A stretch of DNA of 61,847 bases, filler included, from Sluysia triapertura (lineage: Eukaryota): assembly GCA_046118255.1 (NCBI GenBank). It is 5 parts of 5 records of this genome, joined end to end, with 100 filler letters (N's around TTAATTAATTAA, not from the genome) between each part and the next. Parts side by side here need not be neighbours in the genome. Positions count along the whole stretch, not along the records: positions 50,754 to 61,847 come from JBJNIA010188987.1; 4 more parts are not named here. One strand, written 5' to 3'. The notes under the pieces are model-generated. The model had not been told where the DNA came from. It worked only from the letters and a program-made list of their open reading frames with translations, and did no database searches. Position 1 is the first letter of the stretch. Every line of letters begins with the position of its first letter. The position numbers were made by a program, and so were the translations under genes. Positions 50,754-61,847 of the stretch are shown here, piece after piece.

Positions 50754-53529
50754 TAATATCCAGAATTGAAGAAATTTAACTTTTCTTATTACATTACTTG
50801 CGTTAGTTTATTTTTATAAGGAATTGATATCACTAAGATATCTCGCAAAATCTTAAATTTTATTTGTAATTAATTTGGATTTTATAATAGATCCATCGAA
50901 AAGTCATCTTTAAAATTAGTGTGAAAGTGAAGAATTGATTAATTCTGCCGTAACATTGTATATTTTGTCATTATATAGTTTTATTTTTATATACATAAAT
51001 TTTTCTTAATAAACCTTCAAGTCAAATTCATTGTTTCTCGATTTATAATAACTTTTATAGTTTCAACTATAAAATCACCACTTAAATAGGTTTGTTAGAA
51101 TATAATTCTAACGGCGTAAACTAATTATTCCGATCCTGTTTCAAAGGATCGTCGAAAAATCATACTTAAAACTATTGAGTAAATTTTATAGACAGATACT
51201 ATTGAGTCAATTTTATAGACAGATACAAATACCTTTAAAATACCTGGCATAACCGTAGGATTTTCTAAATTTTGTTAACCTCCAATACTTTCACTCCACA
51301 AATCCAACGGCTGGCCCTAGCTGATAAGTCTAGTACGTTGGTGAACTCAAAATTTTAATTTAACTTTTATTCTACCTTTCTCACATAAGTAATTATGGAA
51401 ATTAAAGACTTTTAAATCATCAAACAAATTTAAAATTCGTGAAAATGTGATTAAAACGGAATAGAGCAAAATAGGCTTCAAAATTAAACCAAGCTTCAAA
51501 GGTCCACAACTTCAGAATCAATAGATATTTTTAATGATGTTCTTAATTGTATAGAATAATTTCAAAACTGGAGAAAATAATATAATATTTACAGAATAAT
51601 ACGGAAATGATGTCAAAATAATTCGATTAGCTATTGGAATACATAAGGGATTCAAAGTAAGGTTAATCTATCGTACATATTTTACCACCTCTTCACATAA
51701 ATTGAGCTAATTCAAAAATTTTGTTTAAAAAATCCTATTTTATAAACATTTTTCAAATATTCTATAATTATTTTTATTATTACTAATCCAATAATTAAAT
51801 TGTTTTTATTCTAAAATTAACACAATTAAAAGCAAAAAAGTTAATAAAAATAAGAATACTAAATAATGAATAAAATATAAAGAAAAAGATATTAAATGTT
51901 AAAGTCAATAAAAAAGACGACGAATGAAGTCAATATTAACAAAAATTATTTCTATTGAATTAAAATAAATCAAAATTGTAATATATTACATTTTTTGTCT
52001 ATTTATTATTATTTATTTTAACTTCAAAATCTCATTTTAAAAAATAGTTTATTTTTTCATTTTATATTCTTCGAAAAACTAAATCTACTGTTTTTTGTTT
52101 AATCGAATTAAATTCATTATCTTCGGAAAATTGTTTTTAAAAATAGTAACGTATTACTGTTTTACTTTTATTGCTAATTATTATTTTTAATTTTAAATAT
52201 AATTAATAATTTCATTATTAATAATTATGAAAAAATAGTAATAACTTTTTGTAATTTATCTTATGGTTTTTCATCAGTTTATATAATTTTTTAATAACTA
52301 CATCGATAAATACATTTGAGTTCTGGTTGTTTCCGTAAAGGCAAATAATAATTATTATTGTCATAATAATTAATCGAAATAAGTGTTTATCTACTTAAAC
52401 AAACAATGCGAGTATTACGGCAACATCAAATATTATTTGATTATTATATTAGCGACAATTTTATATATAATATTGGCTTAAATCATAAAAAAGATATTAC
52501 TTTTATTGTCGTATTATAACGTAAATAAACGCTTTATTTACAAACAAGTGAATAAGATTTGTTTTTTACATCTTTATTTTTTCAGATTAATTTTAATGAG
52601 TTTGGTGTATTTTCAAATGGTTAAAACATAGCACTTTTGATACCATTTGTACTGTTTTTTTTCTTGTTTTTGTGTTATAAAAAAAGAAAGAACGATTTTG
52701 CGAAAATACAAGCCAAACAGATGAATTGTGATAAAAAAAACCTGTGGTGAAACATCTTCGATAAATAAAAATGCACCAAGTACTAAGAAGAACAATACAT
52801 TGGCAATATAACTTACATGATGTGATATTGAGGGTTTCTTTAAGTCAGTTGCGCTAGATTTCTATCTAAGAAATCAGAAAACGTTTTAAGTGATGCTATT
52901 TTTATATATTATTTTATTTCAATGTAAATACTACAATCATTACATGTATAATCAGCATCATCAAGCATTATTTCGAATTCATATCAATTCATTTTAACAC
53001 GCATAGAAATTCTATTTTAATAATAGTAATGATAACTTAAAACTGATGTTTTTAATGATTTATTTAGGAGGATTTTTATATATGTATGCATGTATGTATT
53101 GTAAAGCCTCTTTTATTTCACCACCTACCATTTCTCCACCCATACTTATGAAAAATTTTAGAGATCTCGGTGCTTTGGAGGAGCTAAACGTTGAAAAGGA
53201 CCCGAAAAGATGCCAGTTTGTAACTCTGGTCCAGAATGAAGTTATTATGGAATCTGACATTCTCGATGAATAAAAAATTATTGATACTTGGTTTATGTCT
53301 TTATTGAAGGAAAATAACTTTTTAAGAAAACTTCTAGCATTTACCAACTATCAAAAATTTATGAAGAAATGAGTATTTTCAAAGGGGAAATAAAATAAGT
53401 TTTACAGTATATAAAATATGTATAATTATTAATTATTTTAATTGTTGTCAACTCAAAATTTAAACACTCTAGTCATAAATGCAATCGAGAACAAACATCA
53501 ACACAATAAAAAGTGAATTTTATTTTTAT

Positions 53530-53600
53530 GCGCTTTTGAGTACTTACTTTGCAGTAGATATGAGCGCAATATAAATTAATATATTATTATTATTGTTATT
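53530..53600 (+). mobile_element. L2-type 3' tail, second copy
   Basis: Near-identical to 35565-35630. Confidence 0.7.
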
Positions 53601-53924
53601 TTTATTTTTATTATAAATATTATTTAAGAAAATATTATTATTAATCTTTATCTACGCCATAAGTAAGAAAGTAATTTATAATTAATGTAATTTTAAATAA
53701 TTATGTATTTAATTATAATACTTTACACTAATATCAAATAAGAAAAAAAGTATTGCATACGTGTTAAAATGTTTTTTATCATTAATTTTTCTTGTGAAAT
53801 TACATACACATAAAGATGTACTGTTTATTTTCTTCATTTATCACAAATTAAAAATTAATTATTAAATTTAATTATTTAATGATATAATTATGTCTTTCTT
53901 TGGTTTTCTTAATATTTGCTACTC

Positions 53925-54250
53925 TAGCCTTGAAGCTCTCCAGACATGAATCACATAGAAAATCTGTGGGAGATTGTCAAAAGGAGAATTTATACCCATA
54001 AATCAACCATCAGTCGGAACTTATTGAAACCACAATGACGAGATCAAAAAATTGTGCTCATGTGGCATGCCTTTCAAGATCAGAAAATTATTGGATAACA
54101 AAGGAGGGCAAACAGAGTACTGATAGAGCAATTTGTACACATTTGATTTGTAGTAAATTGTGTTATCACATTCTTCATGAATAAAATTTCTGTATGTTTT
54201 GGATATGAGTATTTTTACTTTCACCAAATACTTTTTGGAGAAAGTAGTTA
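53925..54250 (+). mobile_element. Tc1 transposase 3' remnant with probable right end
   Basis: 'SPDMNHIENLWEIVKRR' ... 'NKGGQTEY*', then caaatactttttgga, which resembles a Tc1 TIR. Confidence 0.8.
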
Positions 54251-54538
54251 TTTTCCAACATTTTACATTTTCCGTGACATCGTTTTTATTAATAGTTTCA
54301 TAGTATCCTTGAAAAATGTTGAATTTTATAAACAGTTATATATACAGTTTTATGAAAATTTTAAAACTGTAAATTTAAATAAACAATGTATAACCTTCAC
54401 AATAATTACTCAATCTACTACATAAACATTCCAAAATTCACAATTACATAGTATAATATCGAATCTTAACCATTTTAAGTCACTTTACAATTCATAAAAC
54501 ATTCAACAAACGCTTCATTTTAAAGGCATGATCTAACT

Positions 54539-54947
54539 AAGAGGTTCCGAAACGTTTTCCAATTGTAGACCCCTTGTCATGTTTTTCAATTTTAGATAGA
54601 CTCCCATTCTATTCACTTTGAAATATTTAAATTTCTAACAGTAGTGAAGTACCTATAGTGGTCTATAAACCCCTAGAAGTCGTACTATGGAGCGAGTGAG
54701 ACACGTATAAAATGCTCCGAGATCAAGTTTCAGACCGACGATATTAATTATATTAATAATATTATATTTTTGTAATTTTTAAATGTCAAAATTATATCAA
54801 TTATACTGTTTTTTGCAATTTTTGAAATTTCTTGTCATTGAACCCCATTTTCATTTCATAGACCCCCAATTTTTTTCGCCCACGTAGACCACTTACAGGT
54901 TTTCATCGACCCCTGGGATTCGATATAGACCAATTTGGGAATCACTG
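54539..54947. mobile_element. hAT (Charlie/Buster-type) MITE, 409 bp
   Basis: Left aAGAGGTTCCGAAAC, right TTTGGGAATCACTG. Subterminal GACCCC repeats. 8-bp TSD ATCTAACT / ATTTAACT. Confidence 0.8.
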
Positions 54948-55291
54948 ATTTAACTTATAAATTCACACGTTTTTGGATTGTCAAATAAACACCAATTCAC
55001 TAGAAAAGATCAAATTATAACAGTATTCAATGCTCTCACCAAATTCATATACCGTACAACTCAGAAAACACTTAGCACATCTTCAATCATAATTAAATCT
55101 TCAAAAATCATTAAATAATCTTTTATACATACTGAATTTTACACCTTTAACACTCATTTAACTTATTGAGTTATTTATTAAATCATTTTTACTTCAAATC
55201 ATTCAACATTAATCTTTACGGTACATCTTTAGCCGTAATAATACTTATTATTATTATATATTATAATAATAATTATAAGTTTATGTACATA

Positions 55292-55445
55292 ATTAATAAT
55301 TTTGTCATTAGTTATTTTTGAATGACAATTGAAGCCATATTTTACTTTGATAAGAACCGGAAATATTATTATGATTTAATTAAAATATTACAAAAGGTTC
55401 CTCAGTTAGACATAGGAACATTTATGTGCAGTCATTCTTGTACAA
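55292..55445 (+). repeat. Left arm of a 154-bp inverted repeat
   Basis: Reverse complement of 56839-56992 with 4 mismatches by manual alignment. Confidence 0.95.
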
Positions 55446-55755
55446 TTGATAATTTGATTCAACTCAATGGAAATTTGTCAACTTCTGACACCACTTTGCG
55501 GAGGGCTTTTATTTTTATTAATTGAAACAGTATCAAAAACATTAAACTTTGTAAAACTAATTATTAAATTTTTTTCTAACAAATGAACTAGTTAACGAAA
55601 TAGGCTTAATGCCTTTAAATAAATAACAACACATTAAAACAAAGCCAAAAAATCATTTAAATAAATTTTAAGTGTTGAAAGAACATAAATCTGCTTATTC
55701 GATGTTGGTTTCACGAGATTAGATGCGAAATTGAAATTACTCGATACTAAATATA

Positions 55756-56962
55756 TTATTTGTCGAATATATTTGTGTAATATAGGCACTCTTTCATTTC
55801 ATCTTCTATATCTATGTTAAAACCCATTTCGTAAATTGTTTTCTTTGACTTTTGATGTGGTACATAACGCATTTGATTCCATAAACGATCATCATTATCA
55901 TCAGCTTTAATTTTATGTGGAAATAATGGAAGATGGCAATCAAATAAATTTGTATCATTACATATTTCATTATGTAAATCTGGGAATTTGAATTTACTTT
56001 GTATATCGAATAACTTTATGGTAAAATATTTCATAACATTTAAAATCACAACTGAACATCTTTGTAATGCATTTACAGATTCATTTTTACTAAACCACAA
56101 TATTCCATGATAAATAATTATTATTTCAATTGTATCAACTAAATGACTAGTATTCATTAACGCTTCTTCTACAATTTCTGTATCACGTTCTGATAAATTT
56201 CCCAAACTTACTAATCGAGGTGCAAATAATTGCCATAATGAATCAAGTTACCTAATCCTGAAAATATAACAGGAGTTGACCAAAGATCTAAGTTCATTTT
56301 ATGTATTCCGTTTGTTAAATCTTTATGAGTTTCACTAAAACACATTAATTTTGACTTTCAACCCACTAAATTTATCATAATCCAAGTTATTTATTCTAAT
56401 AAGACTTCTTTATGTTTCAAGATTTAACTTGCCAGATTTTGATGTTGGACTCCCTCTTGTATCTTTATCAGTCATAATTGTATAATTGTTTAATAAATTT
56501 TTAATTTTTTATACTTTTATCTATTCCGTATGATTTATTCATTGTATGAAATTTAATAAAATATCTATCAGTAGGATCAGCAGGATCAATTAATAAAAAT
56601 ATAAAGAAATTATTAATTGTAATATCGTTTCCAACATCTGATCTGTAATTCATATAAAAGTGAGCAATATGAGAACAATTTAATTTTAATTCTGTATAAC
56701 ATAAATTGGGATTGTTTTCCTTTTCTAATTTTAAAAATTTTTCGAGAATATTCCAAATATCAGCCAAATGGCGAAATGGATCGCAAGTTCATTCAATTTT
56801 CTAAACAACTGGATATTAATTTTTGTTCGTTCAATTGGTTGTACAAGAATGACTGCATATAAATGTTCCTATGTTTAACTGAGGAACCTTTTGTAATATT
56901 TTAATTAAATCATAATAATATTTCCGGTTCTTATCAAAGTAAAATGCGGCTTCAATTGTCAT
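55756..56962 (-). pseudogene. Disrupted ~400-codon intronless ORF of unknown family inside the inverted repeat
   Basis: ATG at 56962 (MTIEAAFYFDKNRKYYY...), open blocks 56501-56767 and 55756-56205, and frameshifted protein-like text between them. Confidence 0.55.
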
Positions 56963-56992
56963 TCAAAAATAACTAATGACAAAATTATTAAT
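56839..56992 (-). repeat. Right arm of the 154-bp inverted repeat
   Basis: Reverse complement of 55292-55445. Confidence 0.95.
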
Positions 56993-58230
56993 AATAATCA
57001 TAAACCAAATCTATATTGGATTAGTTATAGATTACCCGATTATATTAAACCGATCTATTATGATATAACATTACAAATTTTAACTTTCAAGATCATAATC
57101 TATTTCTTCTCTAACGTTTACTGTGTTTTGGATACAATTAAGTAGATTTGGTGGCCAAGTAGAGATGTGTCAACATCTTTGATTACTACTTTTATATACT
57201 AATTGCGATTTCGATGACTCCACATTTGTTGTGCATGATAGCCATGACCAGTTGGCTAGTTGATTCTTGTAACACTCCAAGATATTAATTGGCGACGTTC
57301 TACACGAAATGATGCTTGATGCGTTTTTTCTTTTTTCAGAGTCACTCTGACAGATTTTTCTATTCGACAGAGAGTTAGTTGATATTGCTGTATTTATCGA
57401 ATAGCATGAGAAATTTGATATAATTTAAATTAAGAAGATAAGTTGTTATTAAACTATGCTTGATGTTGTTAAGATGGATGTTTTCTGTGTCTTGAGTTCG
57501 AACTGTTTGGAAAAAAATCATGAAATGCTAGATTTAGAAGCATCTGGATGCTAAAATAGTTTCTTTTTACCAAATATATTTAAACAAGATTCGCATTGAC
57601 AGTTAAGCAAATCATTTAAAAAATGAATACTTTTGTGACATTAAAATATAAACAAAAAAAATTAGAGTGATAAAAGATAACGAGAAGTAATAACAGTAAC
57701 AATAGCATTTGAATGAAAACAATAATTATAAGACTTTGTAAATTTTTGTAAATAAGGATGTTAATATGTTAATAACCAAGTGGAAATTTTATGTGTATTA
57801 TCATTCTTATGAGTTTGTTGTAGATACGTGTTATATTAAAGCTAGATTGTTTATATTGCTGATGTTTCTATTCTTTGTAATTTATTAATTTTTGAGTTGC
57901 TATGTTATGATTTTTGAATCAAGATTCAAATAAGCTTGTGCATTGTTATGTGAAATTAAGTGAAGGTGTAGATAATAAGTGCAAATGGTTATGTGTATGT
58001 GTAAATTGTTTGAATCATTAATAAAATAGTCAGCAAAGTATAAAGAAAATGTGAAAGGTATAAAGCAAGAGGAAGTAGCTTTGACAAAAACAATAACTAT
58101 AGTTAACGATAATCATATGCAATGACTGTGTTTGTTTTTTAAATGAGTTAAGTAGTTTATTTAATGTTCTGTGCATGTAAGAAATGTTCTTATGTGATGA
58201 AGTGTACTTGTGATTTGGATGTGAATTCCC

Positions 58231-58295
<65 letters not shown>
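58231..58295. repeat. (AAT)n microsatellite
   Basis: Perfect run between an LTR-like start and the tRNA-derived repeat. Confidence 0.97.
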
Positions 58296-58297
<2 letters not shown>

Positions 58298-58620
58298 GGA
58301 CTGACTGGGAATCGAACTCGGCACTTTCTTCCTTCACAGATGTGTAGTTCGATTCTCTAACAATTTTTTACTATAGTCAATTATGCTATTATTATTCTGT
58401 GGCACTTTAGGCCTGTACCAAATTAATAAATTAGTAAATTCAACATGTGGGCTTCACAAAATGGACTACCCGGGAATCTAACCCGGTACCTTCTCGCATC
58501 ACAGCTATGCTCTTCGATGCTGTGACTACTGAGCTATCAACCCCGTCTAACAATTTTATTTTATTATAATCAATTATATTATCATTATTCTATGGCACTT
58601 TAGACCAGCACTCCAACAAT
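58296..58620 (-). repeat. Tandem pair of tRNA-derived repeat units with shared upstream flank
   Basis: rc GGGGTTGATAGCTCAGT...GGGTTAGATTCCCGGGTAGTCCATTTT (58462-58544) and a second B-box half at 58297-58345. Each is preceded by a G(C/T)CTAAAGTGCCA.AGAATAAT flank, also seen at about 27075. Confidence 0.8.
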
Positions 58621-60720
58621 AGTAATAATATTAATAATAAATTGGCCAAAATAATAGTATCATACATTAATGACGCATTACATTATTCTATTGCGTAACT
58701 GTTCAACCAATGAAATGGGATGTGGCTATATCAGTGTCAAGTTACATTTTATTGGAGCAAATTAATTGGTACATTTAATTAGCACACAAATTAAAAGTTT
58801 CGGCAAAAACAAAATGATGGCAGTAAATAAAAATTGAAATATAAATTTAGAAAATGAGAAAATCATCCATTTTTAGTTGATATTGTTTTACAATGTCAGA
58901 TCGTAAAAAGTTATCATTTCAAGAATTTTTATGTAGAATTCGATCAAAATTCAAATAAGAAACGCATAAGTTTAACTCAAACCAATATTAAGTATTGTTA
59001 ATTTAATTATAAATTCGTTAAACGTACTGTCAATTCTAATCGAAATGTGACTTCAACGAATAATATCATATTATCAATGCCAATTATGTCAATAATAATT
59101 ACACAAATATGATTTTAATATTTTAATATATTTTGTAAATAAAATTATGATTTTAAGATATTAATAAACAAAAAAATTAATACATGAAATGAAATGTGAA
59201 AATAATTACTGATTAATAGCGAAAATAATATATAATTAAAATAATTTTAAAAACATTCTTAATGTTAAAATATGCTAAATACCCATACTAAGTCCGAAGA
59301 TGTGCCAAAACCTTTATCAACAAAGGTCTTTCAATTACACAAATGCATTTACTTCGTTTAGTACTCTGAAAGATGTCTTCATTATTACATGTCCTAACAG
59401 CTGTGGTTTTTTAACTCCTAACCAACGGCAAAATAAAATTGATCAGGGTCCGGTTACAGTAAACGTCTTATGTCGTGAAGATGGCGTTTCTGTAATTAAC
59501 ACCAAGTAAATTGTAAAATGAAAATTCGAGTAACAATTTAAAATAAAGTTTGTCAACTAAACTAGAGGGTCTTATTTCTATTATCAATCGAACTAATTTA
59601 CAAATAAACTCGATATGTTAGATTCGTTTATTAAATAAAGATCTAAAGGAATACAAATTTATTAATAAATTAATGCAAAGTAATTAAAAAACAGAATAAA
59701 AAGATAAAATTGATGTAATAAATGATTTTAAAATCAAAATCGAAATGATCTTTGATTAATTATAATATTTTAACGTACAAAGAAAGTTTAAAATTTAAGT
59801 TTAAAAATTGAAATCCTCCTATAACAATAAATCATACAAAAAACTAAATTAATATCCACGATGGCTGAGAAGATTTGATTAAATTAACTCTGAAACAACT
59901 AACTAAAATGGCGTCGGTAAAATGGCAAATTGATGTAGTTAAAAATTATGCATCGAATAATTGTATTCACATAAAATTTGTAAAAACGAAATTGTAGTAA
60001 TGCACTTGTGTTGATGAAATTTGTTTACATAACGAAATTGTGTTTGTAATTGGACTGATGCTAGTTTTTATACCAGTCATCAACCAATAAGAATAGATGG
60101 AATGTTCTAAAACATTCTAGAAGCTTCTATTCTATTTTTAGAAGCTTATTTTCTTTTTTCGAAATTTTAATTTCTTGTTTGGATAATAAATAGTTTTCAG
60201 ATATTAAGATTTAAATGATTTTAAAGTTTTTAAATGATATTTTACATAATTTTAGAGGGTTGTGATGGCAACCTTACACTTCATCAAATTATTAAGATTT
60301 AAAATTTAAGTTTTATTAATTAATTTGTTTCAATCTAAATATGCTCTAAAAAATAATTGACTTAAACAACGACATTTCGAATATTAATGATACATATTGT
60401 TCAAAAAGAATAATTAATAAAGTAAATCAGCAATTTCTTTCATATTTAATAATTACGTATTGTTTTTTTGTTGTGCTCAATAATTAGCTACTGTTTTCGA
60501 CCTTTTATTTGTCTTTTTTAATATAACAAAATCAATAAATTGATTTAATTATGAATATTTAAAACTTTATTTTTAATTGTATTGAAAATGTAAAAATATC
60601 GTTTTAAATAAATATTCTACTTTGAATATTCTACTTTATATATTTTATTTTATATAAATTTTACTTTATGTATACTACTTTATAAATACATTATTCAAAC
60701 TTCAATTTAAGAGACTATAC

Positions 60721-61721
60721 AAAGTATTGTACAACATTAGTATTTTATTGATGTTCCTGAGTTTTTCAATACCTCTACACAATTTTTGACATCGAATTAA
60801 TCAATGTATTTACACTTTTTATTTCAGTCTTTTCCCAAGCATCCAATATTGCATCTTGTAATTCAAAAATGGAGAAAGTAGTGCAAGTATTGCCAAAAAG
60901 TTAAACAGATCAAGACATGCGATATCCAATTATTTGGACAATAGTTATAAAAGCAAGGAAAAAATTGGGACGTCCTAAAGTACTTTCTAATTGGTAAAAA
61001 ATGAGTTTAATAAGGTATGCATAAAATACAACTTACAACTCGCATAATGTCAGATTTAGAGCTAAAATGCAGTAAAATGAAGTAAAATGCAGTACGGAGA
61101 ATATTAAAAAATAGTGGTGAGGTCGAATTCATTAAAATGCTAGCTCATAAAATAGCAAGAATTAACTTTGCGAAAATCATATTAATAACCACACTGACTG
61201 GACAAAGATAATATTCTCAGATAAAAAGATATTTAATTTGGATTGTCTTCATGGTTATAAATACTATTGGCATCATATAAAGGATTCAAAAGATATCTTT
61301 TTAAAGAGAATTTGTGATGGAGGATCAGTTATGGTATGGGTGCCGTAATTTATGATAAAAGTTAGCTTTGTGTGTGGTTCCATCAACTCTTAATGGTGAT
61401 TAGTAGTTCCGTATGTCAAACTTCAGCAGGATAACGCTCCTTGTGATCGATCTAAACCAACACGTAATAAGTTCACTGAAGATTGATTAAAAGTGTTAGA
61501 GTATCTAGCAAGATACCCTGACCTCAATCAAATAGAAAATTTATGGTTGAAATTGTCCTTTAATGTTTATAGTCAAGGAAAACAGTATAACAATATATCG
61601 GAGTTAACAAATGCAATATTGGATGTTTGGGAAAAGATTGAAATAAAAAGTGTAAAAAGTTGTGTAGTGGTATTGAAAAACTCAGAAACATCAATAAAAT
61701 ACTAATTTTGTACAATACTTT
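60721..61721 (+). mobile_element. Decayed Tc3-like (DD34E) transposon with an inverted copy of its 3' end at the left
   Basis: 'SIAKKLNRSRHAISNYL', 'GRPKVLS', 'WTKIIFSDKKIFNLD...YYWH', 'GGSVMVW', 'QQDNAP' with 34 residues between D and the E of 'IENLW'. 60721-60864 is the reverse complement of 61601-61721. Confidence 0.9.
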
Positions 61722-61847
61722 TGAAACGAAATTTATCTAACTAAATACAATATAGTAATTAAAAGTGTAGTAAAATTGGAAACTATAAATAAGTAATAGT
61801 TTATTCGTGTTTTATTTATTAAATAGTATTGTTAATTTGTTATAATA

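What the first reader, a model, noticed from the sequence alone, without database searches (positions are those of the whole stretch)
55292..56992. Fold-back unit: ~97%-identical 154-bp inverted arms built from the 5' end of the unknown gene they enclose
Seen: the arms 55292-55445 and 56839-56992 differ at 4 positions. Each carries ~30 nt of leader plus the first 41 codons of the same frame (MTIEA(I/A)FYFDKNRKYYYDLIKILQKVPQL(D/N)IGTF(M/I)CSHSCT), both pointing inward. The minus-strand copy continues as a ~1.2-kb intronless, disrupted ORF that I cannot assign to any family. The plus copy continues into a different 26-codon tail. The arms look much younger than the decayed interior. Inference: either a long-TIR (Mutator/Foldback-like) element carrying cargo or an unknown transposase, or a local inverted duplication whose transcript would fold into dsRNA able to silence the parent gene family. 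I found no TSD.
Basis: partly seen in the sequence, partly recalled or inferred. Interest (0 to 1): 0.7.

Follow-up and report, generated by a model that had tools for sequence, protein, structure and literature searches.

The report
Inverted repeat around an orphan ORF
A real 167-bp inverted repeat encloses 1.4 kb holding one convincing but relative-less coding stretch; it is most likely the remains of a cut-and-paste transposon with long terminal repeats, and the claim that its arms come from the start of the enclosed gene is not supported.

Summary
The inverted repeat is real. The arms 55292-55445 and 56839-56992 match at 150 of 154 positions, and weaker homology runs out to 55279/57005 (167 nt, 95%). 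I found no target-site duplication.

- Only the last 163 codons on the minus strand (55759-56247) are open beyond chance. About 0.007 such runs are expected per piece, and this one has clear codon-position bias.
- The other stretches, including the 41-43-codon arm ORF, are no longer than chance gives in 25%-GC DNA. The arm ORF shows no coding bias.
- The right-arm ORF stops two codons past the arm, and three more in-frame stops follow within 45 nt.
- GT-AG spliced paths exist, so "intronless and frameshifted" is not the only reading.

None of the pieces matched Pfam, PHROGs or NCBIfam. The 163-codon stretch also found nothing in PDB sequences, the ESM Atlas, 1.84 billion protein representatives, or the viral and metagenome contigs.

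A Tc1-like element 3.7 kb away (60720-61723) has the same layout: roughly 140-bp terminal repeats that hold the end of its own transposase gene.

Best reading, at 0.4: a relic of a long-TIR DNA transposon. Rivals are a local inverted duplication, two insertions of one short repeat, and a hairpin-RNA locus.

The parts
55279..55445 (+). Left arm of the inverted repeat. The core 55292-55445 is 97.4% identical to the right arm. In the outer 13 nt, 9 positions match.
56839..57005 (-). Right arm of the inverted repeat (core 56839-56992).
55322..55525 (+). 67-codon ATG ORF: 41 codons inside the left arm plus 26 unrelated codons. It has no coding bias (GC1-GC3 = 0.00) and no relatives.
56831..56962 (-). 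43-codon ATG ORF of the right arm with its TGA stop. With a 4-nt indel, arm homology runs 5 nt further (ATTGA) and then covers this stop.
55756..56247 (-). 163 open codons plus a TAA stop. This is the only stretch that is coding beyond chance: GC1-GC3 0.22 and G1 0.25, each about 3 sd above the null. No relative was found anywhere.
56504..56788 (-). 95 open codons in the frame of the arm ORF. The length is as chance gives. Coding bias is weak (GC1-GC3 0.14, about 4% of null runs reach it). There is no ATG before codon 45.
56214..56508 (-). Three short open pieces of 32, 24 and 48 codons in two frames that tile the gap. Their lengths are as chance gives. They may be decayed coding sequence, exons, or non-coding DNA.
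56190..56251 (-). Candidate 62-nt GT-AG intron (donor TAG|GTAACT, acceptor TTTATCAG|AAC). It would join the 48-codon piece in frame to the 163-codon stretch. It is not validated.
   Evidence: Read. One search lists the same donor with an acceptor at 56211.
55446..55755 (-). 310-nt stretch between the stop codon and the left arm. Two minus-strand AATAAA signals sit at 55508-55519, ahead of the left arm in the direction of transcription.
55438..55445 (.). Palindromic octamer TTGTACAA at the inner end of the left arm. Its twin is at 56839-46. Because it is its own reverse complement, it reads both as the end of the repeat and as an 8-bp direct repeat around the interior.

Best explanation
The unit 55279-57005 is the relic of a cut-and-paste (class II) DNA transposon with long terminal inverted repeats of about 167 bp. 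The arms are the terminal repeats. The short ORFs that start inside them are by-products of the repeat, not proven gene starts. The interior carries what remains of the element's own gene or of captured cargo, and only its last 163 codons are still open. Shown: the repeat, its sharp limits, the one real coding stretch, and the transposon-rich setting. Inferred: mobility, and that the arms are binding sites for a transposase made by this or a related copy.
For: - The arms are equal in length and sharply bounded: 167 nt at 95%, around 1393 nt. The whole unit is 1.7 kb, the usual size for such elements.
- The piece is poor in genes and rich in DNA transposons. It holds a mariner-like fragment near 53933-54170 and a Tc1-like element at 60720-61723.
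- The C-terminal ORF of that neighbour matches the Sleeping Beauty transposase at E=3e-4. Its repeats of about 140 bp contain the last ~34 codons of its own gene.
- So 'arms made of the end of the enclosed gene' is shown here to be ordinary anatomy for a long-TIR element in this genome.
- The arms differ at 8 positions and one 4-nt indel, which rules out a simple fold-back assembly chimera.
Against: - No target-site duplication at 55279/57005 or at 55292/56992. A palindromic TA or TTAA would be hidden inside the repeat.
- The outermost 13 nt are the least conserved part of the arms (4 of the 8 mismatches), whereas working termini should be the best kept.
- No piece of the interior matches any transposase family or any protein at all.
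- There is no second copy within the 11 kb. Copy number in the genome could not be tested.
Confidence: 0.4

Rival explanations
1. Local inverted duplication. About 170 bp (56834-57005) was copied in reverse orientation to a site 1.4 kb away, by template switching or templated insertion during break repair. It has no function.
For: - No target-site duplication.
- The inner junction lies at a palindrome (TTGTACAA), followed by a 4-nt slip and 5 nt of microhomology (ATTGA).
- A cluster of 4 mismatches within 6 nt sits close to the outer end. Both features are the kind of scar that error-prone copying leaves.
- It is a single copy within the piece.
Against: - As far as I know, templated insertions are usually tens of nucleotides long, and fold-back duplications adjoin their source. 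Here 1393 nt separate the copies.
- The transposon-rich setting and the neighbour with the same layout favour a mobile element.
Confidence: 0.28
2. Two independent insertions, in opposite orientation, of one short dispersed repeat of about 170 bp (MITE- or SINE-like) that happen to flank an unrelated orphan gene fragment.
For: - Arm length is typical of miniature elements.
- The arms show no coding bias and are cut off from the interior ORF by stops.
- The region is full of repeats.
Against: - Neither arm has terminal repeats or flanking duplications of its own.
- There is no poly-A tail and no tRNA-like head.
- There is no third copy in the 11 kb.
Confidence: 0.17
3. Hairpin-RNA locus. A minus-strand transcript that runs through both arms folds into a duplex of about 160 bp, which is diced into siRNAs that silence the enclosed orphan gene or its paralogues.
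For: - In the minimum-energy fold of the whole unit, 159-160 of the 167 arm positions pair arm to arm. The arm duplex is -229 kcal/mol and has perfect runs of 70 and 45 bp.
- In Drosophila simulans, hairpin-RNA loci are reported to arise by partial 5' duplication next to the target gene (PMC10317233).
Against: - No expression or small-RNA data could be reached.
- Two AATAAA signals precede the left arm on the transcript strand, so an ordinary mRNA may end before the hairpin is complete.
- The arm is not shown to belong to the coding gene, and no paralogue is known to act as a target.
Confidence: 0.06
4. Assembly artefact: a chimeric or fold-back read built into the assembly.
Against: The arms differ at 8 positions and one indel, are short, and lie 1.4 kb apart. 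A fold-back chimera would give identical arms running to the end of the read.
Confidence: 0.04

Closest known systems
Long-TIR Tc1/mariner elements (Tc3-type), as exemplified by the neighbour at 60720-61723
   Same: Terminal inverted repeats of 140-170 bp overlap an end of the internal ORF. The unit is 1-2 kb. It lies in the same transposon-rich region.
   Different: The interior has no DDE_3 or HTH match, whereas the neighbour matches the SB transposase. No TA duplication is visible. The terminal bases are poorly conserved. There is no significant similarity between its arms and the neighbour's repeats (13% of shuffles score as high).
Mutator-like elements / Pack-MULEs
   Same: Long terminal repeats of 100-400 bp that can flank captured or non-transposase sequence.
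   Different: No 9-11-bp target-site duplication. No MULE transposase domain.
Foldback (FB) elements
   Same: Long inverted arms around a variable middle.
   Different: FB arms are built of tandem subrepeats. Tandem Repeats Finder finds none in these arms. No 9-bp duplication.
Drosophila hairpin-RNA (hpRNA) loci
   Same: An inverted partial copy placed next to a gene, able to form a long perfect-run duplex (PMC10317233).
   Different: The loop is 1.4 kb and contains the presumed target. No small-RNA or transcript evidence. The link between arm and gene is unproven.

Membership tests
Class II TIR transposon (any superfamily) | Terminal inverted repeats | tested here: met
   167 nt, 95%
Class II TIR transposon (any superfamily) | Target-site duplication flanking the repeats | tested here: inconclusive
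   No direct repeat of 2-11 bp at either candidate boundary. A palindromic TA or TTAA would merge with the repeat.
Class II TIR transposon (any superfamily) | Transposase (DDE/RNase H-like or other) encoded inside, or a related autonomous copy elsewhere | tested here: not met
   No Pfam, PHROGs or NCBIfam hit for any piece. HMMER over 1.84e9 representatives gave only a spurious repeat match. Autonomous relatives elsewhere in the genome could not be tested.
Class II TIR transposon (any superfamily) | Several copies at different sites, and empty sites | not testable with these tools
   No access to the genome.
Tc1/mariner, long-TIR type | DDE_3 / HTH transposase and TA duplication | tested here: not met
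   No domain hit. No TA pair at the boundaries.
Mutator-like element | 9-11-bp duplication and MULE transposase | tested here: not met
Foldback element | Arms made of tandem subrepeats | tested here: not met
   No tandem array within 55279-55445 or 56839-57005
hpRNA locus | Arms able to form a long RNA duplex | tested here: met
   159-160 of 167 positions paired in the minimum-energy fold, perfect runs of 70 and 45 bp
hpRNA locus | One transcript spanning both arms, and Dicer-dependent siRNAs from them | not testable with these tools
AATAAA signals before the left arm are a weak hint against.
hpRNA locus | Arms homologous to an expressed target gene | tested here: inconclusive
   The arm ORF shows no coding bias and is separated from the real coding stretch by stops. 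No paralogue was found.

The most novel reading that the evidence does not exclude
The 163-codon stretch is the C-terminal part of the transposase of an undescribed family of DNA transposons. Such a family would move through terminal repeats of about 167 bp, leave no visible target-site duplication, and have a protein with no detectable relative in 1.84 billion representatives.
Probability: 0.1. Interest if true: 0.6.

Novelty: new member of a known kind. Interest (0 to 1): 0.25.

Why it matters
If it is a transposon relic or a small inverted duplication, it is ordinary genome debris in a repeat-rich, AT-rich region. Its main value is as a caution: in 25%-GC DNA, open frames of 40-100 codons and shared frames arise by chance and should not be read as a gene. 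It would matter only in two cases. In the first, the orphan 163-codon ORF proves to belong to a multi-copy element with fixed ends, which would be a new transposase family. In the second, the arms yield small RNAs, which would be a young hairpin-RNA locus outside Drosophila. Both are cheap to test once the genome and its read sets can be reached.

Tried and rejected
Protein searches on the interior pieces and the arm ORF, all blank:
- Pfam, PHROGs and NCBIfam.
- Word search on the 163-, 95- and 67-residue pieces.
- HMMER over 1.84e9 representatives with the 163-residue piece. It gave one hit, a low-complexity repeat protein that matches only residues 1-25, so I treat it as spurious.
- PDB sequences.
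- ESM Atlas. Best scores were 0.75 and 0.84, below the lead threshold.
- Exact look-ups of six ORFs. None is in the collection, so this genome's own ORFs are probably not in the protein databases, and absence of paralogues there says little about copy number.

Structure:
- AlphaFold2 on the 163-residue piece gave mean pLDDT 45.6. That is too poor for a fold search, so I ran none.

DNA searches, all blank:
- Viral and metagenome contigs, by protein and by a 28-nt arm pattern.
- No tRNA and no Rfam family in the piece.

Ideas tested and dropped:
- The arms as Tc1-like termini facing inward, prompted by the TTGTACAA octamer shared with the neighbour's repeats. The alignment score is reached by 13% of shuffles.
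- The interior as a hAT-like insertion with an 8-bp TTGTACAA duplication at the centre of a palindrome. The interior has no terminal repeats of its own.
- A ciliate genetic code. TGA stops are also in frame, and all five Gln codons in the 163-codon stretch are CAA or CAG.

Full report
**The repeat itself**

The piece (50754-61847) is eukaryotic DNA of about 25% G+C. The reported inverted repeat is there.
- The arms 55292-55445 and 56839-56992 differ at 4 of 154 positions: 55337, 55338, 55409 and 55426.
- Homology continues outward, through a patch of 4 mismatches in 6 nt, to 55279/57005. That makes 167 nt at 95%, with 1393 nt between the arms and a blastn E-value of 1e-73.
- With a 4-nt indel the match also runs 5 nt further inward (ATTGA; read).
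- Both inner ends lie at the palindromic octamer TTGTACAA (55438-45 and 56839-46).
- Each arm has a 30-nt leader and an ATG followed by 41 shared codons. The plus-strand copy runs on to 67 codons.
- I found no flanking direct repeat at either candidate outer boundary.
- The arms contain no tandem subrepeats.

**The enclosed 'gene'**

On the minus strand the arm ORF stops at 56831-56833, and three more in-frame stops follow within 45 nt. Stop-free pieces of 95, 32, 24, 48 and 163 codons then follow, spread over three frames.

I calibrated these lengths against a second-order Markov model of the piece.
- Runs of 95 codons or more are expected 0.59 times per piece. Runs of 163 or more are expected 0.007 times.
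- Three other stretches of 95-108 codons do occur elsewhere in the piece.
- The 163-codon stretch (55759-56247) also has GC1-GC3 = 0.22 and G at first positions = 0.25. Null open runs give 0.003±0.062 and 0.14±0.037. It is, or recently was, coding.
- The 95-codon piece has a weak bias (0.14, reached by 4% of null runs).
- The arm ORF has none (0.00).
- In this piece 5% of ATGs open 42 or more sense codons, and each arm holds ten ATGs on the two strands. An arm ORF of this length is therefore unremarkable.

The statement that the arms carry the first 41 codons of the gene they enclose rests only on shared strand and frame.

A search for GT-AG paths shows that two to five small introns can join the ATG at 56962 to the stop at 55756, giving 257-296 codons. 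One candidate, which I read directly from the sequence, has good consensus: 56251-56190, 62 nt, donor TAG|GTAACT, acceptor TTTATCAG|AAC. Such paths are easy to find in this composition, so they prove nothing. They do mean that 'intronless and frameshifted' is not the only reading.

**Relatives**

None were found.
- Pfam, PHROGs and NCBIfam gave nothing for any piece.
- The word search was blank for the 163-, 95- and 67-residue pieces.
- HMMER over 1.84 billion representatives returned one hit for the 163-residue piece. It is a repeat protein matching only residues 1-25, which I treat as spurious.
- PDB sequences, the ESM Atlas, viral contigs and metagenome contigs gave nothing usable.
- The single-sequence AlphaFold model was too poor to search with (pLDDT 45.6).
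- None of six exact ORFs from the window is in the protein collection. This genome is probably not represented there, so the blanks speak to other species rather than to copy number in this genome.

**Context**

The piece has no clear host exon and holds several repeats.
- A mariner-like fragment lies near 53933-54170.
- Two tRNA-like SINE-like units sit behind an (ATA)21 array at 58229-58611.
- A 1-kb Tc1-like element lies at 60720-61723. Its right-hand ORF matches the catalytic domain of the Sleeping Beauty transposase (E=3e-4).
- The terminal repeats of that element are about 140 bp, with 109 matching positions and one 23-nt indel. They contain the last ~34 codons of its own transposase gene and start CAAAGT after a TA.

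**Mechanism**

I put a relic of a long-TIR cut-and-paste element first, at 0.4.
- For: the layout, the size, the sharp equal arms, the setting, and the local precedent.
- Against: no visible target-site duplication, the outermost bases being the least conserved, and no transposase signature.

The rivals, in order:
- A local inverted duplication by template switching or templated repair (0.28). It fits the missing duplication, the palindrome and microhomology at the inner junction, and the mutated patch near the outer end. The 1.4-kb distance is unusual for that mechanism.
- Two independent insertions of one short dispersed repeat (0.17).
- A hairpin-RNA locus (0.06). It is physically possible: 159-160 of 167 arm positions pair in the fold of the whole unit, with perfect runs of 70 and 45 bp. 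Hairpin-RNA loci born by partial 5' duplication next to their target are described in Drosophila simulans (PMC10317233). But two AATAAA signals precede the left arm on the transcript strand, and no expression data could be reached.
- An assembly chimera (0.04). It is unlikely because the arms differ at 8 positions and one indel.

**Limits**

Copy number, empty sites, long-read support, transcripts and small RNAs are therefore all untested. These are the tests that would separate the explanations.

**Verdict**

This is a real inverted repeat of a known general kind around an orphan coding remnant. The link between arm and gene, and the age contrast between arms and interior, do not. Interest is low to moderate.

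Noticed in passing
window 60720-61723: Decayed Tc1-like element of about 1 kb. Its terminal repeats of about 140 bp include the last ~34 codons of its transposase ORF. It matches the SB transposase at E=3e-4 and has TA on its left flank. It is internally deleted and frameshifted.
   Followed up: partly
window 53900-54170: Mariner/Tc1-like transposase C-terminal fragment on the plus strand. The motif region 53933-53969 is 76% identical to 61510-61546.
   Followed up: no
window 58229-58611: A perfect (ATA)21 microsatellite, followed by two diverged tandem copies (74-83% identical) of a unit whose minus strand looks like the 3' half of a tRNA. This is probably a SINE pair. ARAGORN and Rfam call nothing here.
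   Followed up: no
window 54520-54940: C-rich stretch with a recurring GACCCC-type motif, a 21-bp periodic array at 54826-54877, and the strongest negative GC skew of the piece. Probably another repeat family.
   Followed up: no
window 51171-51226: 27-bp unit repeated twice in tandem at 96% identity.
   Followed up: no
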